This document shows, one piece after another, positions 2,606 to 52,980 of a DNA stretch of 64,000 nt. Source of the DNA: Octopus bimaculoides (Eukaryota); NCBI RefSeq assembly GCF_001194135.2, contig NC_068994.1, positions 28,770,028 to 28,834,027 of the forward strand, read 5' to 3'. The position numbers were made by a program, and so were the translations under genes. Under the pieces are notes generated by a model. It was given only the letters and a program-made list of their open reading frames with translations, was not told the DNA's origin and ran no database searches. The number at the start of each line of letters is the position of its first letter. Position 1 is the first letter of the stretch.

Positions 2606-4615
2606 CATCATCATTATCATCATCGTTTAATGTCCGCTTTCCATGCTAGCATGGGTTGGACGATTTGACTTAAGACTGGCAAGCCAGAAGGCTGCACCAA
2701 GCTCCAATCTGATCTCGCAGAGTTTCTACAGCTGGATGCCCTTCCTAACGCCAACCACTCCGAGTGTGTAGTGGGTGCTTTTATGTGCCAGCGGCACAAG
2801 GGCCAGTCACATGGTACTGGCAACGGCCACGCTCAGAAAGGTGTTTTTTACATGCCACTTGCACGGGAGCCAGTCCAGNNNNNNNNNNNNNNNNNNNNNN
2901 NNNNNNNNNNNNNNNNNNNNNNNNNNNNNNNNNNNNNNNNNNNNNNNNNNNNNNNNNNNNNNNNNNNNNNNNNNNNNNNNNNNNNNNNNNNNNNNNNNNN
3001 NNNNNNNNNNNNNNNNNNNNNNNNNNNNNNNNNNNNNNNNNNNNNNNNNNNNNNNNNNNNNNNNNNNNNNNNNNNNNNNNNNNNNNNNNNNNNNNNNNNN
3101 NNNNNNNNNNNNNNNNNNNNNNNNNNNNNNNNNNNNNNNNNNNNNNNNNNNNNNNNNNNNNNNNNNNNNNNNNNNNNNNNNNNNNNNNNNNNNNNNNNNN
3201 NNNNNNNNNNNNNNNNNNNNNNNNNNNNNNNNNNNNNNNNNNNNNNNNNNNNNNNNNNNNNNNNNNNNNNNNNNNNNNNNNNNNNNNNNNNNNNNNNNNN
3301 NNNNNNNNNNNNNNNNNNNNNNNNNNNNNNNNNNNNNNNNNNNNNNNNNNNNNNNNNNNNNNNNNNNNNNNNNNNNNNNNNNNNNNNNNNNNNNNNNNNN
3401 NNNNNNNNNNNNNNNNNNNNNNNNNNNNNNNNNNNNNNNNNNNNNTGCCTCGGTGAGGCCTAAAGTTTGAAGGTCGTGCTTCACCACCTCATCCCAGGTC
3501 TTCCTGGGTCTACCTCTTCCACAGGTTCTGTCAACTACTAGGGTGTGGCACTTTTTCACACAGCTATCCTCATCCATTCTTGCCACATGTCCATACCAGC
3601 GCAATCGTCTCTCTTGCACAACACAACTGATGCTTTTTAAGTCTAACTTTTCTCTCAAGGTACTTACACTCTGTCGAGTATGCACACTGACATTACACAT
3701 CCATCGGAGCATACTGGCTTCGTTTCTTGCAAGCTTACGCATGTCCTCAGCTGTCACGGCCCATGTTTCACTGCCACGTAACATGGCTGTTCGTACACAT
3801 GCATCATACAATCTGCCTTTTACTCTGAGTGAGAGACCCTTTGTCACCAGCAGAGGTAAGCGCTCTCTAAACTTTGCCCAGGCTATTCTTATTCTAGCAG
3901 CTACACTTTCAGTGCACCCTCCCCAGTTACAAACTTCGTCACCTAGGTAGCGGAAGCTATCAACTACTTCTAGTTTATCTCCCTGGAGTGTAGCAAAGGT
4001 TGTTTTCTGCACATTTTCAGTGTTAATTGCTCCTGAGCATCTGCTACATACAAAAACTATTTTGCTAGTTAGCATTCCTTTGATATTGCTGCACCTCTTA
4101 TGTGTCCATAGCTTACACTGGGTACATCTTATGGAGTTTCCACCTACGCCTTTTCTACAGATTGAGCAGTGCCATCTACCTGAAGGAGTTTGTGTTTTGT
4201 CTATCTTCCTACTTATTAGGACTTTGGTTTTAGCTAGGTTGCCTCTCAGGCCCTTCGATTCTAGTCCTTGCTTCCACAGCTGATCTTCTCCACTAGTTCT
4301 GATAGTGACTCAGCAATTAGTGCAAGATCATCAGCATAGAGGAGCTCCCAAGGGCATCCCGTCTTGAATTCCTATGTTATTGGCTGGAGGACTATGATAA
4401 ATAGGAGGGGGCTGAGTACTGAACCTTGGTGGACCCCTACCTCTACCCGGAATTCTTCACTGTACTCATTGCTAACCCTCACCTTACTGACAGCGTCCCT
4501 GTACATCTATCCCTAGTTTCCTCATTGACCACCAGATAAGGGAGCGGGGGACCCTGTCAAAGGCTTTCTCCATGTCAACGAAAGCTAGGTACAGAGGTTT
4601 ATCTTTGGCTAGGTG
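2606..4615 (-). mobile_element. 5'-truncated RTE-clade LINE (RT C-terminal half, 3' UTR spanning a gap, (GAT)n tail)
   Basis: Minus strand GCPWELLYADDLALIA (YADD at 4327-4338), KTK, DSFRYLG, GSETW, RRLRWYGHV, GRPRKTW; the tail ends aaagcggacattaaacgatgatg at about 2606-2640. Confidence 0.92.
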
Positions 4616-4689
4616 ATGATGATGATATATATATATATATATATGGTGGAGTTGTCATGTACATCTGCATGGACCTCACACCCCAGGTC

Positions 4690-6500
4690 CTTTTGTCACA
4701 CTCAAATTCAGTATGTGATACACTAATTGTACATATAAAACAACCCAATGTAGTTATATGTACTACATATTGCCCTCCAGTTGCTCCAAATCATGCAGTC
4801 AAGTTTGAAAACTACCTTACAAAAATAGAAGTTCTAGTCACATTAGAACAACACATAAGTGTACTTCTTATGGGAGACTTCAATCTGCTGAATGTCAGAT
4901 GGCCTGATGGCCTTTCTCTCCCAGAATGGCACGATGCAAACAAGGACATGTGGAGTCCCTCCTGAACTTCATCAACACTTTGTACATTGAACAAATAGTT
5001 CTCAAACCAACCAGGGTAAGTAATATACTGGATCTCTGCTTCACATATAATATGGATCTTGTCTATAATGTGAAAGTGACACTGATGCTACTCTTGGATC
5101 ACATGGTAGAACTGACCATGTATGGATCAAAGGAGACCATGGACATGCAGCCTACAAGAAACTCTCAAAATCTTTAGAGCTTGAACTTCCAAAAGGCAAA
5201 CTGGAAACAAATTGGGAAAGAGATCATCAGACTAAACTAGCCTAAATGTCTCTCCTGACCGGACACCGACATGAAACTTCAACAATTCATGTCTGTAATG
5301 CAAGCCATATGCTACAAATGTGTCCCGGAGAGAAAGGCCACACGAACAAAATCCCTAGGGAGACGAAAATTCTTATGAAACGGTGTACAAAAATTTCAAA
5401 TTGCTTAAACAAATTGAAAGTAGTGAAAAATCCCACCTGAAAATACAACTGCTGGAAATTGAAAAAAATCTGCAACTCTCCTATGGAAAAAAAAAAAAAG
5501 AGCAGACAAGGAAGCCTGGGCTATAGACAATTTAAAATCTAACTCCAGAGCCTTCTACAAGTTTGCCAAAGAAACAGCCTCAGTGCACTGCAGGATAGGG
5601 CCACTCCTTGAAAAAGATGGTTCACTCACAGGAAACCCAAGGAGGATAAGTGAAATACTAAATGAGCAATTCGAAAGTATTTTCAATCCACCCCTAGGAC
5701 ACTTGCAAGTCAGCAACCCAGCTGACTTTTTTACCACTGCAGATATAAAAACAGAAGCAGTGATGATTGATTACATCAATATAAAAGATGATGTAATAAA
5801 GGCTATAGATGAAATAAACCTGAACTCAGCTACTGGCCCTGATGGATTCTCAGCAATCCTTCTAAAAGCATGTAAGTGTGTCTAGCAAGACCACTGGAGT
5901 CCCTCTTTCAGAGCTTCCATGCAACTGGCAAACTTCCAAGCAAGCTGAAGGAGGGTAAAATATGCCCTATTCTTAAAGGAGGTAGCAGAGCAGAGGTCAA
6001 AAACTACAGACCTATATCTCTGACCTCACACAGCAGCAAGGTCATGGAACGAATAGTCAGAAGAAAACTAATCGCCTTCCTTGAGGAAAATGAATTGCTG
6101 ACTGACACTCAACATGGTTTCTGATCAGGAAGAAGCTGCCTGACTCAGCTCTTACACCACTATGACTGGGTGTTGAAACAGCTGCTTAACCACTCAAATG
6201 TGGAAGTGATATATCTCAACTTTGTAAAGTCCTTTGATAAAGTCGATCATGGAATATGTCACAAACTCCAAATTTGCCATCAGGATATAGGACAAGATGC
6301 TGCAATTGCCTGGGCTTTAGGGGACCACAGCTCTTCAGGATCTTCCCGAAGGGCCTGAGAGACCTACATGGGGTGAATGTGGGTGTTTTCAAAATGTAAC
6401 TAGATGTTTTACTGTCAAATGTCTCAGGTGAACCAACTTCACAGCAGGAAGTGCAGATGAGGGCAGCAAATGTCAATTTCTAAAAAGAATTAGTGAAGTA
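4690..6500 (+). mobile_element. CR1-clade LINE ORF2 relic (APE endonuclease, RT, internally deleted 3' end)
   Basis: Fragments LMGDFN, PTRVSNILDLCF, SATGPDGF, KNYRPISLTSHSSKVMERIV, QHGF, VIYLNFVKSFDKVDHG. 6290-6480 resembles the CR1 C-terminus also seen at 33310-33570. Confidence 0.88.
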
Positions 6501-9554: not shown

Positions 9555-12500
9555 ATCTCATCTCATCTAGGTCATCCCGTAGGACGCCCCAAAACTGTTT
9601 CCACACATTTTCCCCATTCATCTCGATCTTCCATAATGGTCCTCAGCTCCTGTACCCCTTCCATACCAGTATCCTCCAGCAAGTTGTCGCTACAGGTCAT
9701 CTTCCTCCTTCCTTCCTTGGTTCTTCCTTCTGTTGGTTGCCAGAGCACTAGCTTGTTAGCAATTTCATCAGCGTGTCTGATGCAGTGTCCAGCTATGCTG
9801 TATCTTCAATGTTACTTTTGGTAGTCCCTGGTATAAGTCGGTGTTTGTTGTATGACTCTTCCAGGAGACATTGAGTACCATTCTAAGCATCCAACTGCTT
9901 CTTCAGTGCTTTAGTGAACATTCATGTTTCAGCCCCGTATAGAACAGACTCTATTGTTGCCAGAAATAACCTCATTTTCAATTTCCTTGCTAACTTTGAA
10001 CTCCATACCTTTCTCAATTTATAGCATGCACTCCAGGCAAGAGCTTTCCTTGCTACGATGTCTTTTTCAGTACTTTGTGTCCACACACCAAGGTATTTGA
10101 AATTTTCAATTACTTTCAGTGACTTACTGTCTCTCACTTTCACTGACAGGCATTTCGTGATTGAATACTTGCAGCTCTGTTTTGTTTCCATTACAGTACA
10201 ATCCTACCTTCCCCGATTCCTGCTCTAATTCCGTCTCTCCATCAGGAGTGATCACTTTTGCTCTGGTGTTCTCATATAGCTTACTTATTGCTCTCAGAAT
10301 TCTTGGTGGAATATCATATGCTTTAAGTATCTTCTTCATCATTCCTCTATGTACTGAATCAAAAGCCTTTTTTAAAGTCTACATAGATAACGATAGCCTT
10401 CTTGTTATGGCTCTTAACTCCCTCTATCAATCTTCTAAGTGCAACAGTGTGAGATGTTGACTGTCCTGATCTGAATCCATTTTGATTTGGTCGCAATTGT
10501 TTGTCTATCTTATGTTGTATTCAGTTAAGTCAACTTCTGGATCCTTCCCAAGTAAGTTGTAGAAATGAGTGTACCACTTCTTGATTCTCTCATCCTTTGA
10601 TTTCCCTTTGATGATTCCCTGCTTTGCAGCTTTGCAACCAGTGATAGAGCTAATCAGCCACCAGCTTTCTCCATGCTTACTCTTTGTATCTGCATTTTCG
10701 ACCTGGGAGATCACTTCATCCAGTTCTTCTTCTTGAATCTCTTGGTACACCTGTTTTAGACCCTCTTTCTTTCTTTGTAAAGTTGGTTTAGTACCATTGT
10801 TGGCAACTTTTTGATAGTTGCTGAAAGCCTCTTGTACTTCACTGCATGCTTTTTCTACCCTAGCATCATCAGCTAACTGTCTCCGTTTCATCCTCTTCTT
10901 TATCAGTATCAGTTCTGCTGCCGCTTCTTCATTTAATTGGCATAAACTTGCAATATTGCTCTGTAACAGTATCCCTGTTGTTCTGCTGCCGCTTCTTCAT
11001 TTAATTGGCATAAACTTGCAATATTGCTCTGTAACAATATCCCTGTTGTTGGATAGTTCAGCCAATCTGTTATGCATTGTGACCGTATTAAGCTGTTGAA
11101 GTTCTGTATTTTGGAATGTAGACCAATTGTAGCATTTTTTCCTTGCAGGAGTTTATCTTGTACGTAGACTAAAACATAGTCTGGCTGTCACTAAGTGATG
11201 GTCACCCCCTAAGCTGCTTAAGCTGTTATATGCTTCTACATTGTGTACAGAATTCTTCCTTTTCTTATTAATTAGAATGTAATCAATTTGGGACCTGCTA
11301 CCATTCATGTCGGAGATAAATGTCCATTGTTTTCCTTTCTTTTTCTTGAATAAAGTGTTAGTGATGTGAAGATTACATTCTGTTGCATGATTCAGGAGAA
11401 GCTGGCCATTCTTGTCGGTCTCTTTATGGAATGTGTAGCATCAAAATCACCGCATTCTATGGTAACATGGTATTTTGGTATTTCATTGATGACATTTGTC
11501 AGTGTTTCATAGTGCTCCTCTGCATCCTTGCTTCCCTCTGTGGGTGCATAGTTAATAACTACTGTGGTGGATGGGTTTCCATTGAACGTGGCTGTGACTA
11601 TTCTGTCATTTACTGGTATTACTTCAGCCTATGCTTTCTCTGCCAAACTGTTGATTACTAATCCTACCCCTCCTGCTGCAGCACCATTAGTACTTCTCCA
11701 TGCACTTGTTATTAGTGTGCAGCCTTCAAGTTGTTCAATGAGAGTAGGTCTTCTTCATGCACTATCTTGTGTTCAACTACTCCAAGGATGTTTAGTTTGC
11801 ATTTGTTAAAGTTATTAGCCATCTCCAAATGTTGCTCTTTTCCTTAAGCATTCTGACATTAAGTGTTCCAATTTTCAGGTACCTTTTACTGTTCATAAGT
11901 TTAATTCCTCTGTTCTCGCCATCAGCTACTTCCAGTTGGATTTAAAGTAGTACCTTCATCAATCTTTATGCGACTTTCTTGAACATCTGGAATGTCTGAG
12001 TCAGGGGCTCTAACCCTAGTGCTGTTAACGTGTGGATTCATAGAGGTGTCAGTTGCACATATTATAGGAGTCATAGGGTGCTGCTTCATGTGGTCCTGCA
12101 GTTTCCATCTAAATAGGAATATTAGGATCTCATCCATTGTCTTGTATTCAAGATCCCCTGCATGACATCCTGCTAGTTCAAAGCCAGGAATCTGATCTGT
12201 TAGGTCCTGCCAATAACTAAATCCATGCCCTGCTGCTGACACTTCGATTTATTGTCATTAAGGTTTTGTCTGTCTCCTACCCTTTGATCTGTCTGGCCTG
12301 GTAAGACCTGCCTGAAGATTTCTCTCCCTCCAGCATAGCTCTCTGGGTCAATGGAGCACATAAGCACTTCACCGCGACAAGGTACTTGTTGAACTGGCCT
12401 TTGATTACACAGTAGTTCTTCTGCCCTTTGACAAGTCTTATTTTTCGTCCTGCAGGGTGTCCTACAATCACTCTCCTCACCAGTTACCAGTAGCACTCAA
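9555..12500 (-). mobile_element. RTE-clade LINE, second family, near full span but internally deleted and frameshifted
   Basis: Minus-strand APE motifs (SQIDYIL, DHHLVTA), KAKQGIIKGKSKDERIKKW, MMKKILKAYDIP, ITPDGET, ENFKYLG, ESVLYGAET; (GATGA)n tail at about 9555-9570; 68-bp tandem duplication at 10913-11048. Confidence 0.88.
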
Positions 12501-27478: not shown

Positions 27479-29897
27479 TTGTTGGAAGTTAAGTTGGTAA
27501 ATAACTAGAGACAGTTACATAGACAAATAATGTATCAATATAATATATAGATATCATTGACACTAATATATCTAGAAATTAGTAGTTAGAAAGATAGATG
27601 AATAAACAGGTTAACAGATAGATTTAGGTTGAAAGATTTAAGCTGATAAAATATATATTTATCAACATCAACAGATGTCTTGGGATGAAGGCTGATAGAT
27701 ATAAAACTGTGACTGTAAATATATAGTCTGCTGTTTAACTGATATTACTATAATGCATACTCACAGCTTATTATGAGAGAAGGGAGAAAAGAGAACAATA
27801 TATAAAAAAAAATTGATATTTTATTAAAAGTGTTAAGTCAAATTCATGAGTGCATGACTGCATGCATGGTGCAAGGTTTTTATCATTTTACAAGGACATT
27901 TTGGCTGCAATGTACCTGTTAATTGCAGGATAAGGTCAACAGCAGCAGACATCATACTTTAAACTCAATGAACTGCAGTTCTGGAATATCTCATATGTAA
28001 CTAATCTAAACTCCATTTAAGCAAGTAATAGCGTTAGATGTAGCAGCAGCAGTAGTAGTAGTATAGCCAAAACTAGATATTTTATAGAACACAACTGGAA
28101 GGTATTTGTGAGTTGAATCCATAATTAGTTAGTGATTGTTTCATTTCACTTCTATTTGGTTGCTAATGCCTTTCATAGAATTAACATTGCACTGTTTCAT
28201 TCCCTGATCTCTGTAAATCTGAGGTATGTGAATAATTAAGAAGTTATTGTTTTTGTTATTATTTATAGTAGTGTTGTGGTTGATGGCATAGCACAGCAAT
28301 GAATACTTGTTTTCTGACTTTGCCTACTTTACTAAAGCCCTTAAAAAAGTTATGAACAACACAATATCACCTTCCATATTCTCTTCTCTACATGATTAAG
28401 AGATCGTGTTTAATTAAGAAAATTCTTTCATCATTAGATCGCCATCATCATCATCATTATTATTATTATTCTTATTCTTTAAGAATTTGTGTAAATGTGT
28501 GAATTTGCAGAAGCTGTCAACCCATGGCTATAGTGTGGAGAAGATAAATGTAAAAACAGGAATATATAAATGGAAATAAAACATTACAGTTGTTAACCGT
28601 AGGGTCAATAAAATTGCAAAATAAACACCCTACTGTCATTGTTGTTACCATCATCATCATCATCAACAATAACATCATCATCATCAATCAGAACTGGCTT
28701 AGCTATTTTTTTACAGTCATTTGATGTAAACCTGTTGCACTCAAACTCACTAACTCCCCGTCTTTTTACCTCACAAGTAATCTCACTCATACTCAGATGC
28801 AAAAGTCACACGGGTAACTGTGTGACTTTCACATGCTCATTCATATAGACTGTTCCATAGAACATTTTCAATGTAAAGACATACTCATGCTGCACAATCT
28901 CCTGCTCATACACATTTGAAGAAAACACAGACAGACTCTCTCTTACACTACAGACTCAATGATATAAACGCCAGTCTCTGAAAAGAAGATTTCGTTACAT
29001 TTAACCCTGATTACCCACATTCTTCAGTCTATGAGGACATGAAAAGCTACAAGTACTTCCCTACTTGTTTTAGACTAACTAACAGTTAAAGAAAAAAAAA
29101 AAGATAGTAAAAAGAAACAGCTACCCATAGTTTCAGTTTGGAAAAAATTATTTCACAAATTATTTCTGTAAATATCGATACTTCATAGACATATATATGT
29201 AATCAACATGGATATATCCACTTGATTGTGTTGGGAATTACAAGTCAGTTGATATTTAGTAATTGATGAAAGGTGGTGGCTCTTCTCATGTTTGCATTGC
29301 ATAGACGTTGGAGGCCAGTCTCATCATTTATATCATCTATTAAAAATAATCTGTCATAACTTCTACAATCCTTAATTATTTTTAAATATTAATTTGATAT
29401 TTATTGTGTTAAGTTAAAGGAGTGGGGGCAGGCAGGTCACATCGAACTCATCTTTTTCAATTTGCTATCTCATTCATATCATAGACATCAGAAAACATAA
29501 ATACACACACACACACACCCATGCAGAGAAATTGAGAGAGAGAGAGAGAGAGAGAGAATGGGAAGTTAACAGAAAAATAAGTAATGAAACCAATATTTAT
29601 GAGCCCAAATGATTTATTCATGAAGAAGGGCATGATTTTTCTAGTTTCTGTTGTATTAAAAAGCTCTTTTTGATCTATTCCTGGATAGAAGGCTAGTCTG
29701 TTGCTGGCTAATTTCACTGCTATCACCATCAGCAGACTCTTTAAGTGGTGCCTGTTTTATCCATTCTACTGAAAAAGTTTGACAAAATACAAACCAAAAA
29801 AAAAATAATAAAAGGGCATGATGAAGTAAATAGTTTAGGTGGATATAGCTTAATTATGTTAGATGTAAATGAGGTGTTTTTGATATTGACCTAATAT

Positions 29898-30344: not shown

Positions 30345-30438
30345 ATTTTCAAAATTCCATTCTAACCCTCCAAAACAAATTTTTCATTATCTCCCTTCTC
30401 TTTCTTGACCAATCTACATTCAGTGCAAACTGATCATA

Positions 30439-31893
30439 ATGGAAAAATCTTTCACATGTGAAATTTGTCAAAAGACATTCACCCGTCGATCAAACTTGAC
30501 CCGACATGTCTCAAACTGTCACAGAGACAGAGAAGTAGTAGAAAAATCAGAGAACAATGTCAGCATGGAAGAAACCAACGACGTCAGCTTGAGCAACAGC
30601 CCAATGGGTGTATTTTCCTGTAACATATGCCTACAAGGCTTTACCTTGAACTCTCAACTTCAAGCTCATGCTCGGGAACATGAGGCAGAAAGTGGTGTCA
30701 GTAGTGAGAACATAAATTCAGTTGCTAATACTGATACAAAAAGTGACGAAGTCAGTTCTAGTGTCGAGAGTCTTGGAATGGTGAACCCTTCTATTAGCCC
30801 AATTATTACTACTGATAACAATAATTTGAATAATGGTCCTGATGTTGCTTCTTCAGAAGTTGTTGTCACCACAGATGTGTTAAATCATGATGTCACTTCT
30901 CCAGTTATGGTTGTCAATGGTGTTGTACGTGGTGATACTACTGTTACTCCCAGTCTAATCAACGAAACTATAAATACCACCACCACCTCCACCACTGTCT
31001 CAGCTATATCTCCCTCACCATCTCTTTTGGTTCGTCACTCAAGTCCTTACTCCTGCTCTATTTGTCAACGAGGCTTCTCCCAGCGATCACATCTTGACGC
31101 ACATGTTCGCATACACTCGGGAGAGCGGCCCTACCAGTGTAACCAGTGCGGGGCAGCCTTCTCTCGAAGAGGTAACTTGGTGCGTCATCGGCTGTCTCAT
31201 GGAGGTGAACGAAAACACAAGTGTACTGTGTGTGGACGGAGATTCTCGCAAAAGTCACATCTTCAAGTCCATTTACGGATACACACTGGTGAACGACCTT
31301 ACAAGTGTGACCGTTGTGGTTATGCCTTTTCTCGCAATGGTAATCTCGTCCGGCATCGACGAGCCAACAGCAGCGGCAAGCGTAAATACAGTTGTGTGCC
31401 TCCCACATTGCTGTCAACATCAAGTGGACAACAGTCAACATCAAGCACATCTTCATCGCAAGCTGCTCTCATATCTATGTGCCAAAATAATTTGGCACAG
31501 ACACAAATACAAACTAAAAATGTGGTGAGTGGTTCAAGTCAGAAGGGAGTGAAGACCCATGTTGGTAACAGTGCTGAAGGCAAGAATGCAGCAGCCTTAC
31601 ATCAGCAACAATTACTGCAAACCACTTCCAATACAACTACCACCACTGCAGTGGTAGCAACAGCACCAACTGCTGCAAGCACCAATGTGGTTCAATTAGC
31701 AAATGTCCCCTATCAAATAATGACAGCTCTCCCAAGTCCCCTAAATGCCATTCAGCCAGTGACTAGTTACCACTCCCTGGCTAATGTCCCCCATCAGCTA
31801 GTCACTGTTCCACAACCAATTAGTGTCCACCAACTGGCCAGTCTAGGTAATATTGCCAGCATCCCTCTTCACATTGATGTACCAACAACATAA
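30439..31893 (+). CDS. C2H2 zinc-finger transcription factor: two dispersed N-terminal fingers, a four-finger array, Ser/Thr/Gln-rich C-terminus; 484 aa
   Basis: Uninterrupted ORF with CX2CX12HX3-4H fingers at aa 5-28 and 59-81, plus four fingers joined by SGERP/GGERK/TGERP linkers; the last finger has N in place of the second His. A splice acceptor lies just upstream. No orthologue recognised; C2H2 genes are known to be expanded in octopus. Confidence 0.95.
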   Translation: MEKSFTCEICQKTFTRRSNLTRHVSNCHRDREVVEKSENNVSMEETNDVSLSNSPMGVFSCNICLQGFTLNSQLQAHAREHEAESGVSSENINSVANTDTKSDEVSSSVESLGMVNPSISPIITTDNNNLNNGPDVASSEVVVTTDVLNHDVTSPVMVVNGVVRGDTTVTPSLINETINTTTTSTTVSAISPSPSLLVRHSSPYSCSICQRGFSQRSHLDAHVRIHSGERPYQCNQCGAAFSRRGNLVRHRLSHGGERKHKCTVCGRRFSQKSHLQVHLRIHTGERPYKCDRCGYAFSRNGNLVRHRRANSSGKRKYSCVPPTLLSTSSGQQSTSSTSSSQAALISMCQNNLAQTQIQTKNVVSGSSQKGVKTHVGNSAEGKNAAALHQQQLLQTTSNTTTTTAVVATAPTAASTNVVQLANVPYQIMTALPSPLNAIQPVTSYHSLANVPHQLVTVPQPISVHQLASLGNIASIPLHIDVPTT

Positions 31894-44226: not shown

Positions 44227-44280
<54 letters not shown>

Positions 44281-44520: not shown

Positions 44521-44568
<48 letters not shown>

Positions 44569-49399: not shown

Positions 49400-52300
49400 C
49401 TTAAAAGACTGCAAAATTGAAAGACATTGTGAGAGACAGAAGTGGTAAGTCATTACAATTTTGTAAAGACTGTAACTGAGAAAAATATTTATTTGAAATT
49501 TTATGGAAAAAATTATGGACACAAAGAATGAAGTGGTGGAGACATGCATGGCACCAATATAGAATAAAGTATGCTACATCAGCCGTGGAACATGAAGCGC
49601 AACTGTTAAAGTGCAGTTTCAAATGACTGACATAGAAAAGGAAGTATCAACAAAGACACTAAAAACAACGAAATTATGCTGCTACCCACATAGAATGGTG
49701 CAGAATGGCGAAAGTCATGGTAGAAGATATACCAGTTGGTTATGAAGTGATGTGGGTAGCAGCGGCAGTCATATATGACGTTGAAGAAGTATCCATCCTG
49801 CAAATGAAGAGGAGGGATGCTGTGAACTGGCGAGGTCAGACGATTGAGATGGTAATTCAAGCGGCAAACCAAACTCTGAAAAATTTACCCAATAGAGTGT
49901 TTGTGGGGTAGGGGCTGACAATGTGAGTGGCTGTGAAGGGACGTAGGCCCAGATGCTTCAAGTGTGGAGAGAAGGGCCACGTCTGCTCCAAGTGTACCAA
50001 AAAGAAAAATAAGAATGAGGCCCCTCCCCCCAAAAAACATCAGCAGACAGACCAGAAAGTGCAGCAGAAGGGAAGAAGGAGAGAACAACGGAAGAAAAGA
50101 ACCAAACTACCAAGGAGATGGAGTTTACAACAGTGACTCATAAGCGTAAGAAGGCACGGACAGACGTTAGGTATGCAAAAATAAACAAGAAACTGTTTAC
50201 GGATATGAAGGCGAGGTATCCGGAAGACATAAGAGACATAACCGCCAAAGTGGCAGAGGGTAAACATATTATAAGCCCAACTGCCACACCCAGGAAAAGG
50301 ACGGGGAAATAGGCGAATTTGTACAGCCCCTCCCCAAACTGAAAATGTGAGTAATCTCTTTCCTTTTATTTTTCAAAAATGATTAAGTTAGGCTGCATAA
50401 ATGTGCATGGACTGGGGTTGAAATGGAAACAGGCTTGTTTTCTGGACAACCTCAAGACAAGTGATATAGATGTAGCAGTCTCAACTGTGTCCAAGATGAG
50501 TGGATCACAAGTGTTCTCTCCTCTTCTGAATGACTGAGAAAATTATTTCTCCTAGCTGACAAGGAGTGGGAGGTGTGGTGGTCTTATTCAGGAAGAACTT
50601 GAACCCAGAGGATAGGCTGGTCGTCCTGGATGTAACTCACGAAAGTAAACAGTTCTTCAGGCTGGTAGCTGTGTACGCTCCTAACAAGCATGGGCAGTCG
50701 GGTTTTTTCCAAGACCTGGAGCACTTTCTAGTGACATCTAAAATGGTAGTTCTGTTAGGAGATTTTAACACTATACTCAATACATGGGTAGATAGTGTTG
50801 GCTCGATTGATAGGAAAGGAAATCCTGGCCTCAAGGGTCTACTAGAGAGCTATAATCTAGTAAGCCGTTACAGACTGGATGAGCCGTTTGTTCCACAGTA
50901 GATGTGGAGTAATAACGATGGCTCTCACAGATCTTACATAGATAGGATATTCATTAGAGGTAGAGATAAGACTACTTTTAGTTGTCCATAATTTGATATA
51001 GTACCTTATACGGATCACAAATTTGTGATGTGTGAGGTACACTTAGATAAATGTCATAGACAGGAATCCGGGTACTGGAAGATGAACAAGTCTATTTTGA
51101 CTTGTAAACCCTTCCATGCCCGGATTAAGGAGTTAATACAGAGGGCACTATATGGTGCCATCATTAATAATAGATGGTGGCATGCCCTCAAGAGAGCCAT
51201 TTGTTTAGAGTCTATTAGATTTAGCTATCAGCTAAGTTTATATAGATCTAGAATAGAGGGTGAATTAGTTAAGAACTTAGACGAGGCCTTGGAATCTGGC
51301 TCTGCATCTAGAGTGCTGGTGGTGAGAACGGTCTTGTACTGTCACCTCAACACCAAGCACGAAGGCTGCAGAGCTAGAGCTATGCTACATGCCGTGGGAC
51401 GAGAAGGTATTAATGATGCTGGTTGGGCACGTCGTGTGGAGAGTCAGAAGGGTAAAAAAGCCTCTATAAAGTCTTTAACAGATGAACAGGGGCGCAAGAT
51501 CTATGGACAGGATGAGATGCAAAAGACCTTTCATCAGCATTTCACACGGTTGTTCGGGCAGGATGGTGCACTAGAGTGTGGGGAGACCCTAAAGGGCTTC
51601 CTCGCCAGCGGGCCACGACTCTCGGCATGGAAGGCGAGGTGCTGTGAAGGGCTGATTACAGCTGCGGAGGTCAAAGAGGCGTTGGCCGAGTACACTGGGG
51701 GAAAGTCGCCGGGGCTGGATGGTCTACCCTATGAGTTTTATTGTAGCATGCCAGACTTGTTTGGGGACCTGCTGGCCAGCGTCTACACAAACTGGCAACA
51801 GGATGGGAGAATTCCCAGCTCTGTGAATCAGGGAGTGGTGACGCTGATCCAAAAGAACTCGAGCAAGGGGGATATTATAAGTAATTACAGGCCCGTAACT
51901 CTACTCAGTGTAGAGTTAGAGGTTTTGGCCAAGGTGTTAGCTAAAAGGTTGACACGTGTCATGGAGAAACTTGTAGGGAAGCCGTGCCATCCCAGGCAGG
52001 TCGATCCAGGACAATCTTCACCTTATCTGCTACACTTTAGACAGATTGGGTAAATTAACCGGCAAAGGTGAGGCATTGGTCCATTTAAACCAAAGTAAAG
52101 TGTTTAGTAGGGTAGACCATCAGTACCTGGTGGCAATCCTTGAAGCGGCTGGGCTGGGTCCTGACTTCTGTGGTTGGATCTTTGCCATGTATAGCAGCAT
52201 CAAATCCATAGTCCAAATAAATGGCTACCTGTCGAAGCCATTTCCGATCAAACATTCAGTTCATCAAGGGTGTCCCCTGCCTCTGCTTCTGTATGTGGTG

Positions 52301-52980
52301 TGTGTTGGCTCTTGAACCATTACTGCAGAAGTTGGAGAATTTTGTGGGGCACCCACCAATGAAATCAGTTGCAGTAAGTCTGTCTCTGCTTACGCGAATG
52401 ATGTCCAATGAGGCTCAGCTATCTTGTGTAGAGGAGGCTATCAGAGGATACAAGGTGGTGGCAGGAGCAAAAGTTAACAAGGACAAGTCCATCAGTTTGC
52501 ACCTCAGCACCTGGAGGAGCAAGTTGATATCGTACAGTGTCATGGGTCACTCGACAGATAGTTCTGTTAAGTTGCTTGGAGTTTGGTTTGGACCGGACTC
52601 CCAGACAGAGAAGAATTGGAGCAAGGTAGCAGACAGGGTGGAGGCCCTTGTCCGGAAGGTCACTGTCCCTGAAAGGAAGGGCGGAGGTGCTACAGAGGTT
52701 TATTGCATCTGTAATCACCTACCACCTGACCGTTGTCCCTTGCTCTGACACGTGGCTGAACAAGTTGGAGCAACTCCACTTCTGCATATTGTGAAAGGGA
52801 GGAAAGCCATTTGTGAGGTGCTCTGTTTGCTGCCAGGAACCACTAAAGGGTGGGTTAGGGATGCCCTGGTTGATGATGTGCAGACATGAGTTGAGGCTGA
52901 GGCACCTCTGGTGCTACCTGTAGGGTGATAAGGTGTGGAACCTGCTGGCAGAGGATCTCTTTCCGTGACCAGCCTCTTTG
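49400..52980 (+). mobile_element. Tx1/L1-like LINE: ORF1 with CCHC knuckle and ORF2 APE-RT, decayed and 3'-truncated
   Basis: ORF1 RPRCFKCGEKGHVCSKC. ORF2 starts MIKLGCINVHGL at 50379 and includes AVYAPN, LLGDFN, SYIDRIF, TDHK, GYWKMN, KSPGLDGLPYEFY, NYRPVTLL, QGCPL and a SAYANDV variant of YADD. Confidence 0.92.

What the first reader, a model, noticed from the sequence alone, without database searches (positions are those of the whole stretch)
31048..31395. Zinc-finger array whose helices spell out the (GA)n microsatellite: candidate octopus GAGA-type factor
Seen: the four tandem fingers have recognition helices (-1 to 6) QRSHLDA, RRGNLVR, QKSHLQV and RNGNLVR, an ABAB pattern mirrored in the linkers (SGERP/GGERK/TGERP/SGKRK). 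Known: the canonical code gives R6-N3-R-1 = GAG and H3-Q-1 = NGA, and the Barbas modules RSDNLVR (GAG) and QLAHLRA (AGA) share these contact residues. Inference: read F6 to F3, the site is 5'-GAG NGA GAG NGA-3', satisfied exactly by GAGAGAGAGAGA. The isolated finger 1 (RRSNLTR) also codes GAG. These helices differ from Drosophila CLAMP (RKEH-type), and no BTB domain as in GAF is visible. A convergent GA-repeat reader in a microsatellite-rich cephalopod genome would be a system I know no description of.
Basis: partly seen in the sequence, partly recalled or inferred. Interest (0 to 1): 0.75.

Follow-up and report, generated by a model that had tools for sequence, protein, structure and literature searches.

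The report
Conserved cephalopod zinc-finger, predicted GA-repeat reader
The finding is the DNA-binding part of a real octopus zinc-finger gene, kept almost unchanged in cuttlefish and squid-like relatives, whose four fingers are predicted but not shown to grip GAGAGA-type DNA, as unrelated fly and worm proteins already do.

Summary
Window 31048-31395 encodes four tandem C2H2 fingers with helices QRSHLDA / RRGNLVR / QKSHLQV / RNGNLVR and linkers SGERP / GGERK / TGERP / SGKRK.

They lie in a 484-aa single-exon ORF (30439-31893, +) of Octopus bimaculoides.
- Finger 6 lacks its last zinc-binding His (Asn instead), and this is conserved.
- Finger 1 is absent from the decapod orthologue ORFs and from 1.25 kb upstream of the cuttlefish-type ones.
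- GA/CT is the rarest of the three dinucleotide repeat classes present in this window.

The finger block is 87% identical to decapod orthologues although synonymous sites are saturated. Every base-contact residue is kept except position 6 of finger 3 (Ala to Thr).

The ABAB pattern is not chance (0.004 expected in 1738 four-finger windows). It recurs only in an O. vulgaris paralogue.

The predicted site GAGNGAGAGNGA matches 75 times in the window, always inside (GA)n arrays.

No BTB, KRAB or SCAN domain is present, and the C-terminal tail has no relatives outside cephalopods.

GA binding rests only on the recognition code; nothing was measured. GA-binding zinc-finger factors are already known (GAF, CLAMP, EOR-1). 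I rate it a plausible new member of a known functional kind, of moderate interest.

The parts
30439..31893 (+). Complete coding sequence (484 aa plus TAA) of a C2H2 zinc-finger gene, on one exon
   Evidence: ORF. An identical 484-aa protein is on record on O. bimaculoides chromosome CM046614.1. The 98%-identical O. sinensis / O. vulgaris model (490 aa) starts at the same Met.
30419..30423 (+). Possible splice acceptor (ttcag) 15 nt before the start codon, suggesting a 5'-UTR intron
   Evidence: Read from the sequence. This is inference only; no transcript data were available.
30451..30522 (+). Finger 1, isolated, C-x2-C-x12-H-x4-H, helix RRSNLTR (30484-30504). Found in octopus only.
   Evidence: Absent from the decapod orthologue ORFs and from the 1.25 kb upstream of the cuttlefish-type ones.
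30613..30681 (+). Finger 2, isolated. Its framework is conserved but its helix contacts are not (LNSQLQA in octopus, ESAELEA in decapods).
31048..31116 (+). Finger 3, helix QRSHLDA (31081-31101), predicted triplet NGA (AGA by analogy with QLAHLRA)
   Evidence: Decapods have QRSHLET.
31132..31200 (+). Finger 4, helix RRGNLVR (31165-31185), predicted triplet GAG. Invariant in all orthologues.
31216..31284 (+). Finger 5, helix QKSHLQV (31249-31269), predicted triplet NGA. Helix invariant in all orthologues.
31300..31368 (+). Finger 6, helix RNGNLVR (31333-31353), predicted triplet GAG. Degenerate: Asn replaces the last zinc-binding His.
   Evidence: The Asn is conserved in the decapod orthologues and in the terminal finger of paralogue P0030. 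AlphaFold2 still models a beta-beta-alpha finger with pLDDT about 84.
31369..31395 (+). Basic extension SSGKRKYSC, a probable vestige of a linker plus the first Cys of a lost finger. It may serve as a nuclear-localisation or DNA-backbone patch.
   Evidence: GKRKYSC is invariant in orthologues. Parallel with the F4-F5 junction GGERKHKC is read from the sequence. The function is inferred.
31681..31890 (+). Conserved C-terminal tail motifs (TNxVQL..PYQxM..PS.L..QP and NxPHQLVTVPQxISxHxL...PLHIDxPTT) within a Q/S/T-rich region; presumed effector or partner-docking part
   Evidence: A profile of the tail finds only the cephalopod cluster among 1.84 billion representatives.

Best explanation
The region is the DNA-binding domain of a genuine C2H2 zinc-finger transcription-factor gene with a single coding exon. 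By its tail sequence the gene is found only in coleoid cephalopods. Its finger block has stayed nearly invariant since the octopus and cuttlefish/squid lineages split.

The four fingers are joined by linkers of canonical length. They look like an ancient duplication of a two-finger unit (A = Q-1/H3, B = R-1/N3/R6).

Inferred mechanism: the array lies in the major groove and reads the purine strand 5'-GAG-(A)GA-GAG-(A/T)GA-3', with F6 at the 5' triplet and F3 at the 3' triplet. The site has a 2-bp periodicity, so the protein could bind a (GA)n.(TC)n tract in many registers, and long arrays could hold several molecules. The conserved C-terminal tail would then recruit partners.

Shown here: the gene, the fingers, the helices, their conservation, the non-random ABAB pattern, and that the degenerate site occurs in this window only within GA arrays.

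Inferred only: DNA binding itself, the identity of the two N bases, whether F6 contributes, and any effect on chromatin or transcription.
For: - Helices and linkers are as reported, and the only Pfam families found are zinc-finger families.
- The same 484-aa protein is on record on the O. bimaculoides chromosome.
- The sister-octopus gene model starts at the same Met.
- The finger block is 102/117 and 100/117 identical to the two decapod orthologues, although synonymous sites are saturated (pS 0.78; dN about 0.095). Between the two decapods dN/dS is about 0.016.
- Contact residues at -1, 2, 3 and 6 are all conserved except F3 position 6.
- ABAB is expected 0.004 times and is seen only in this family and in paralogue P0030. 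P0030 carries one full ABAB four-finger module and two partial ones.
- Code support: R-1 to G and N3 to A are well-defined preferences, and canonical linkers are a hallmark of DNA-binding arrays (PMC3668361). QLAHLRA is paired with AGA, and RSDNLVR sits in a design whose target contains GAG (PMC7317221 Table 1).
- GAGNGAGAGNGA matches 75 times in the window against 0.03 expected, and every match is pure (GA)6 inside one of seven GA arrays.
- AlphaFold2 folds all four units as beta-beta-alpha.
Against: - There are no binding data of any kind.
- Simple one-to-one codes have documented exceptions that depend on within-finger context and on position in the array (PMC4330361).
- Ala, Val and Thr at position 6 specify the 5' base of a triplet only weakly. 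F3 position 6 differs between octopus (A) and decapods (T), so the 3'-most triplet may not be AGA everywhere.
- F6 lacks its fourth zinc ligand and may bind weakly or not at all.
- The F4-F5 linker GGERK is not the TGEKP consensus.
- GA/CT arrays are the least common dinucleotide class present here: 7 arrays, against 42 AT and 31 AC/GT.
- No expression data were available.
Confidence: 0.5

Rival explanations
1. It is an ordinary sequence-specific transcription factor whose true motif is a discrete site rather than the GA microsatellite. The site may be GA-rich, or a different sequence read by only two or three of the fingers.
For: - Code predictions for natural fingers are imperfect and depend on context (PMC4330361).
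- The two N positions are set by weak residues, and one of them changes between lineages.
- F6 is degenerate.
- F1 and the F2 helix are not conserved.
Against: - Even without F6, fingers F5 to F3 predict NGA-GAG-NGA, which is still a GA repeat if N = A.
- In real sequence the degenerate 12-mer is met only by GA arrays. Unless N = A is actively disfavoured, GA arrays would dominate the available sites.
Confidence: 0.3
2. It is one of the lineage-specific, rapidly expanding cephalopod C2H2 genes that target transposons or satellites for silencing, like vertebrate KRAB zinc-finger proteins. On this view the GA-like code is incidental.
For: - Cephalopod C2H2 genes are massively expanded, and a transposon arms race has been proposed for them (PMC12513265).
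- The window is full of transposon fragments.
Against: - There is no KRAB, SCAN or other repressor domain.
- The gene stands alone in the window rather than in a zinc-finger gene cluster.
- The finger block and its helices are under strong purifying selection across the octopus-decapod split. That is the opposite of arms-race turnover.
Confidence: 0.05
3. The fingers mainly bind RNA, single-stranded or triplex GA.TC DNA, or other proteins, not duplex DNA in the canonical way.
For: - Some C2H2 proteins that fail in DNA-binding screens are thought to bind RNA or protein (PMC3668361).
- The isolated F1 gives weak Pfam matches to zf-met and zf-C2H2_jaz, which are families of RNA-binding-type fingers.
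- F6 is incomplete.
Against: - F3-F6 are canonically spaced fingers with classic base-contact residues (R, N, H, Q). Canonical linkage is described as the hallmark of DNA binders.
- The jaz and zf-met matches concern F1, which is not conserved.
Confidence: 0.1

Closest known systems
Drosophila CLAMP (CG1832)
   Same: - A multi-finger C2H2 protein with an isolated N-terminal finger plus a C-terminal tandem array and a Gln-rich region.
- It binds long GA-dinucleotide repeats. Its C-terminal four fingers suffice for DNA binding (PMC4945028).
   Different: - CLAMP has six tandem fingers and recognises a 15-bp motif. documents its conservation across Diptera, and that paper reports no strong mammalian homologue.
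- The octopus protein has four tandem fingers, the last one degenerate, and its tail is cephalopod-only.
- Sequence relatedness to CLAMP could not be tested here. Any likeness would be convergent function.
Drosophila GAGA factor (Trl/GAF)
   Same: Predicted preference for GAGAG-type sequence, and a Q-rich low-complexity region.
   Different: - GAF has an N-terminal BTB/POZ domain and C2H2 zinc-fingers (PMC5741055). From general knowledge it has a single finger flanked by basic regions.
- Here there is no BTB, and there are four tandem fingers.
C. elegans EOR-1 (PLZF-like BTB zinc-finger protein)
   Same: A multi-finger C2H2 factor whose ChIP-seq motif is a dimeric GAGA motif, with a suggested role in chromatin accessibility (PMC5741055).
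   Different: EOR-1 has a BTB/POZ domain and the octopus protein has none. No homology was seen beyond generic fingers.
Designed zinc-finger modules for GAG (RSDNLVR) and AGA (QLAHLRA)
   Same: - The residues at -1, 3 and 6 of F4 and F6 (R, N, R) equal those of the GAG module.
- The residues at -1, 3 and 6 of F3 (Q, H, A) equal those of the AGA module (PMC7317221 Table 1).
   Different: - Positions 1, 2 and 5 differ. In particular Gly or Ser replaces Asp at position 2, so R-1 is not buttressed.
- F5 has Val and decapod F3 has Thr at position 6.
- The natural framework and linkers also differ.
Vertebrate KRAB/SCAN poly-zinc-finger proteins (e.g. ZKSCAN8, ZNF287, ZNF436; the names automatic annotation gives this gene's orthologues)
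   Same: The generic C2H2 framework, with 50-54% identity over the four fingers.
   Different: - There is no KRAB or SCAN domain.
- Similarity is confined to the finger framework, so the '-like' names say nothing about orthology.

Membership tests
C2H2 zinc finger (Pfam PF00096) | C-x2-4-C-x12-H-x3-5-H zinc-ligand pattern with a beta-beta-alpha fold | tested here: met
   Pfam zf-C2H2 scores E = 6e-34 with six stretches. F1-F5 have all four ligands. F6 has C2H plus Asn, so it is incomplete, yet it is modelled as beta-beta-alpha.
Canonically linked DNA-binding finger array | Consecutive fingers 28 residues apart, joined by five-residue TGEKP-type linkers | tested here: met
   F3-F6 start exactly 28 residues apart. 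The linkers are SGERP, GGERK and TGERP. GGERK departs from the consensus in sequence but not in length.
GAGA factor (Trl/GAF) and other BTB zinc-finger proteins (EOR-1, ZBTB7/ThPOK) | N-terminal BTB/POZ domain | tested here: not met
   No BTB match appears in the Pfam scan at E <= 0.1. By reading the translations, no domain-like open frame lies on the + strand in the 30 kb upstream. The sister-species model starts at the same Met.
GAGA factor (Trl/GAF) | A single C2H2 finger flanked by basic regions that reads GAGAG (from general knowledge) | tested here: not met
   There are four tandem fingers plus two isolated ones.
CLAMP | Six tandem C-terminal fingers that are always present and highly conserved (PMC4945028) | tested here: not met
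   Only four tandem fingers are present.
CLAMP | Sequence homology to CLAMP | not testable with these tools
   No CLAMP sequence could be retrieved, and CLAMP did not appear among the listed hits.
KRAB, SCAN or ZAD zinc-finger proteins | N-terminal KRAB, SCAN or ZAD effector domain | tested here: not met
   The Pfam scan returns only zinc-finger-type families.
GA-repeat-binding factor (a functional class) | Measured preference for (GA)n DNA in vitro or in vivo | not testable with these tools
   Only a recognition-code inference is available.
GA-repeat-binding factor (a functional class) | Base-contact residues that match modules of known GAG and AGA specificity | tested here: inconclusive
   F4 and F6 (R, N, R) match the GAG module, and F3 (Q, H, A) matches the AGA module. 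F5 has V6 and decapod F3 has T6, and their 5'-base preference was not established.

The most novel reading that the evidence does not exclude
Coleoid cephalopods evolved their own GA-microsatellite reader. This gene, perhaps together with a paralogue that carries one full and two partial GA-type finger modules, would bind (GA)n tracts genome-wide. It would act as the functional counterpart of GAF, CLAMP or EOR-1 (chromatin opening, insulation or promoter architecture). That would be an independent, convergent invention of a GAGA-type factor in a lophotrochozoan.
Probability: 0.2. Interest if true: 0.6.

Novelty: new member of a known kind. Interest (0 to 1): 0.38.

Why it matters
Cephalopods have about the largest C2H2 zinc-finger repertoires among invertebrates. 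The one dedicated cephalopod C2H2 survey I read does not mention binding motifs (PMC12513265). None of this gene's helix strings appears in the searched literature.

This gene is unusual within that repertoire. It stands alone, has one coding exon, is conserved across the octopus-decapod split, and gives a simple, sharply testable predicted target.

If binding to GA tracts is confirmed, it would give cephalopod regulatory genomics a first lineage-specific factor with a known motif. It would also add a lophotrochozoan case to the repeated, independent evolution of GAGA-type factors in flies, worms, vertebrates and plants.

If it is not confirmed, this remains an ordinary conserved zinc-finger gene.

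Tried and rejected
1. Chance. Rejected: the ABAB helix pattern is expected 0.004 times in 1738 four-finger windows and is confined to this family and one paralogue.
2. Recent tandem duplication. Rejected: third-codon identity between the duplicated fingers is no better than between unrelated pairs, so the duplication is old.
3. Hidden upstream BTB, KRAB or SCAN exon. Nothing domain-like was seen by eye on the + strand in 30 kb upstream, apart from retroelement-like frames. The sister-species model starts at the same Met. The frame is open between the putative acceptor and the ATG, so an upstream coding exon is not strictly excluded.
4. Homologue search with finger 6 plus tail. This failed technically: common linker words saturated the candidate list and even the query's own proteins were lost.
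5. Tail-only profile against 1.84 billion representatives. It found only the cephalopod cluster, so no orthologue outside cephalopods was detected. Orthologues whose tails have diverged would be missed.
6. Search with paralogue P0030 to find the GA-type module in other phyla. It returned only generic poly-zinc-finger proteins at about 30% identity. P0030's locus is not on record, so its gene model could not be checked.
7. PDB searches with the four-finger block and with the N-terminal part. They gave only generic zinc-finger structures (ZNF568, Aart, CTCF and others).
8. Literature search for the exact helix strings. No hits.
9. Supplements of the two large zinc-finger specificity papers. They are not held, so no data-driven prediction for the QSHA, QSHV and RGNR core sequences could be made.
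10. GA arrays in the decapod loci. Too little sequence to say anything.

Full report
**What is at the coordinates**

The window is from Octopus bimaculoides. The 484-aa product of the ORF at 30439-31893 (+) is on record, identical, on chromosome CM046614.1 of GCA_001194135.2.

Translation shows six C2H2 fingers:
- two isolated ones, F1 at 30451-30522 and F2 at 30613-30681;
- four tandem ones that fill 31048-31368 exactly, followed by SSGKRKYSC up to 31395.

The helices (-1 to 6) are QRSHLDA, RRGNLVR, QKSHLQV and RNGNLVR. The linkers are SGERP, GGERK, TGERP and SGKRK, and the F1 helix is RRSNLTR.

One thing was missed. F6 reads ...RNGNLVRHRRAN, with Asn where the last zinc-binding His belongs, so it is a C2H-N finger. 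The segment after it (SGKRKYSC) parallels the F4-F5 junction (GGERKHKC). It looks like the vestige of a linker and the first Cys of a lost finger.

AlphaFold2, run on a six-row alignment, still models F6 as a beta-beta-alpha unit with confidence like the others: pLDDT about 84, mean 76. That model carries no zinc and does not show that the finger is stable.

**Is the pattern more than chance?**

F3/F5 share 17/28 residues and F4/F6 share 15/28, against 9-12/28 for the other pairs. Third-codon positions are no more alike, so the two-finger duplication is old.

The alternation (Q-1,H3)/(R-1,N3,R6) x 2 is expected 0.004 times if fingers were independent. It occurs only in this gene's orthologues and in one O. 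vulgaris paralogue, P0030. This sample is biased towards relatives of the queries. Arrays also grow by duplication, so the independence figure overstates the rarity. Even so, the pattern is clearly a specific, inherited feature.

**The gene**

- Pfam finds only zinc-finger families, with no BTB, KRAB, SCAN or ZAD.
- The 98%-identical protein model of O. sinensis / O. vulgaris (XP_029645087.1 / CAI9732720.1, 490 aa) starts at the same Met.
- A ttcag acceptor sits 15 nt upstream of the ATG, which suggests a 5'-UTR intron.
- The + strand of the 30 kb upstream holds only transposon debris and low-complexity frames.
- The gene stands alone in the window, not in a zinc-finger gene cluster.
- The rest of the protein is S/T/V/N-rich and Q-rich low-complexity sequence. 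It ends in a conserved motif, NxPHQLVTVPQxISxHxL...PLHIDxPTT.

**Relatives**

Two orthologue groups were found:
- one whose 90% cluster contains an Acanthosepion (Sepia) pharaonis protein, CAE1243979.1;
- a second that looks decapodiform, from an ENA assembly of unnamed species.

Overall identity to octopus is about 50%, but the 117-residue finger block is 102/117 and 100/117 identical. Synonymous sites are saturated (pS 0.78) while dN is about 0.095. Between the two decapods dN/dS is about 0.016.

All residues at helix positions -1, 2, 3 and 6 are identical, except that F3 position 6 is Ala in octopus and Thr in decapods. The Asn of F6 and GKRKYSC are invariant.

F1 is missing from the decapod ORFs, and none lies in the 1.25 kb upstream of the cuttlefish-type contigs. 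The F2 framework is conserved but its helix contacts are not. The extra 'GAG' of F1 is thus not part of the conserved design.

A profile of the tail alone, searched with HMMER against 1.84 billion representative proteins, found only the cephalopod cluster. As far as its non-finger sequence shows, the gene is restricted to coleoid cephalopods.

**Predicted target**

Arg at -1 pairing with G and Asn at 3 pairing with A are called well-defined preferences (PMC3668361). A published design table pairs QLAHLRA with AGA. It also has RSDNLVR in a design whose target contains GAG (PMC7317221, Table 1).

F4 and F6 share R/N/R with the GAG module, and F3 shares Q/H/A with the AGA module.

The N positions depend on Val (F5) and on Ala or Thr (F3). 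From my own knowledge of the Barbas ANN and TNN modules, Ala and Val at position 6 accompany a 5' A, and Thr accompanies a 5' T. On that basis octopus would read (GA)6 and decapods perhaps GAGAGAGAGTGA. This step is inference.

All three linkers have canonical length, which is described as a hallmark of DNA-binding arrays.

In the window the degenerate pattern GAGNGAGAGNGA occurs 75 times, against 0.03 expected from shuffles. Every match is pure (GA)6 inside one of seven GA/CT arrays. In real sequence, then, the sites available to such a protein are essentially GA microsatellites, unless A at N is actively disfavoured.

**Cautions**

- Nothing was measured.
- Large selections show that simple codes have exceptions that depend on context and position (PMC4330361).
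- F6 lacks a zinc ligand.
- GGERK is not a consensus linker.
- GA/CT is the least common of the three dinucleotide classes present here: 7 arrays and 225 bp, against 42 AT and 31 AC/GT arrays. 'The microsatellite' of this genome it is not.
- With roughly 1800 C2H2 genes in octopus (my recollection of the genome paper), a neat-looking code in one of them is less surprising than it seems. The deep conservation is what lifts this one out.

**Comparison with known systems**

GA-repeat or GAGA-binding C2H2 factors are well known:
- CLAMP has six tandem fingers plus one isolated finger, binds long GA repeats and is conserved across Diptera (PMC4945028).
- GAF has a BTB domain and C2H2 zinc fingers; from general knowledge it has a single finger.
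- C. elegans EOR-1 is a BTB protein with several fingers and a dimeric GAGA motif (PMC5741055).
- That paper cites GAGA-binding factors 'from plants to humans', including the Arabidopsis BPC proteins. A held preprint describes vertebrate GAF/ThPOK (10.1101/559641, listed).

The octopus protein fails the defining features of the BTB families and of CLAMP: it has no BTB and four fingers, not six. It shows no relatedness to any of them beyond the generic finger framework. It would work like them without being a member.

The one dedicated survey of cephalopod C2H2 genes that I read does not mention binding motifs (PMC12513265). The Euprymna ATAC-seq motif analysis does not mention GAGA (PMC9023564). 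The helix strings appear nowhere in the searched literature.

**Verdict**

My probabilities are:
- about 0.5 that the in vitro motif is essentially a GA repeat;
- about 0.3 that it is some other discrete motif;
- about 0.2 that it acts as a genome-wide GAGA-type factor.

It is a new member of a known functional kind, and interest is moderate (0.38).

Noticed in passing
P0030 (O. vulgaris CAI9732359.1, 687 aa; not in the window): A paralogue on the same O. vulgaris chromosome as this gene's orthologue. It carries one full ABAB finger module and two partial ones: QRSHVSV/RLQNLER/QRSHLKA/RNGNLAR, then QRSHISV/QYGNMLR/QRTHLKV/RNGNLMR, then NMNDLER/QKSHMKA/RVGNLIR. The last finger ends in the same C2H-Asn...GKRWSC arrangement. 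Together they could read a much longer GA tract.
   Followed up: partly
window 29534-29557: A perfect (GA)12 array lies about 880 bp upstream of the gene's start codon, so a predicted target sits near its own presumed promoter. With seven GA arrays in 59 kb of non-N sequence this could easily be coincidence.
   Followed up: partly
window 23433-23513 and 25008-25049: Telomere-type hexamer repeats, (TTAGGG)n with about 13 imperfect copies and (GTTAGG)7 perfect, lie 5-7 kb upstream of the gene. These are interstitial arrays deep inside a 60-Mb chromosome.
   Followed up: no
window 13919-14284 (-): A fragment of a piggyBac-type transposase (Pfam DDE_Tnp_1_7, E = 1e-13, covering only the C-terminal third of the model).
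   Followed up: partly
window 4540-6355 (+), 2807-4075 (-), 50566-52748 (+): Open frames that look like non-LTR retrotransposon remains. Of the five tested against Pfam, only 4540-4962 gave a match (endonuclease-reverse transcriptase, E = 8e-5, below the curated cut-off); the other four gave none.
   Followed up: partly
whole window: 7.6% of the window is runs of N (assembly gaps), many of them directly abutting microsatellites. For example, the GA arrays at 44252-44280 and 44521-44567 flank one gap, so repeat lengths and counts are underestimates.
   Followed up: no
window 21423-21611 and 10912-11050: Two-copy tandem duplications of 93 bp (92% identical) and 68 bp (98% identical) in non-coding sequence.
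   Followed up: no
window 30613-30681 versus L003 1298-1375: The isolated finger 2 keeps its framework and the following AHAREHEAE motif across cephalopods, but its base-contact positions change (LNSQLQA versus ESAELEA). This hints at a role other than base-specific DNA reading.
   Followed up: no
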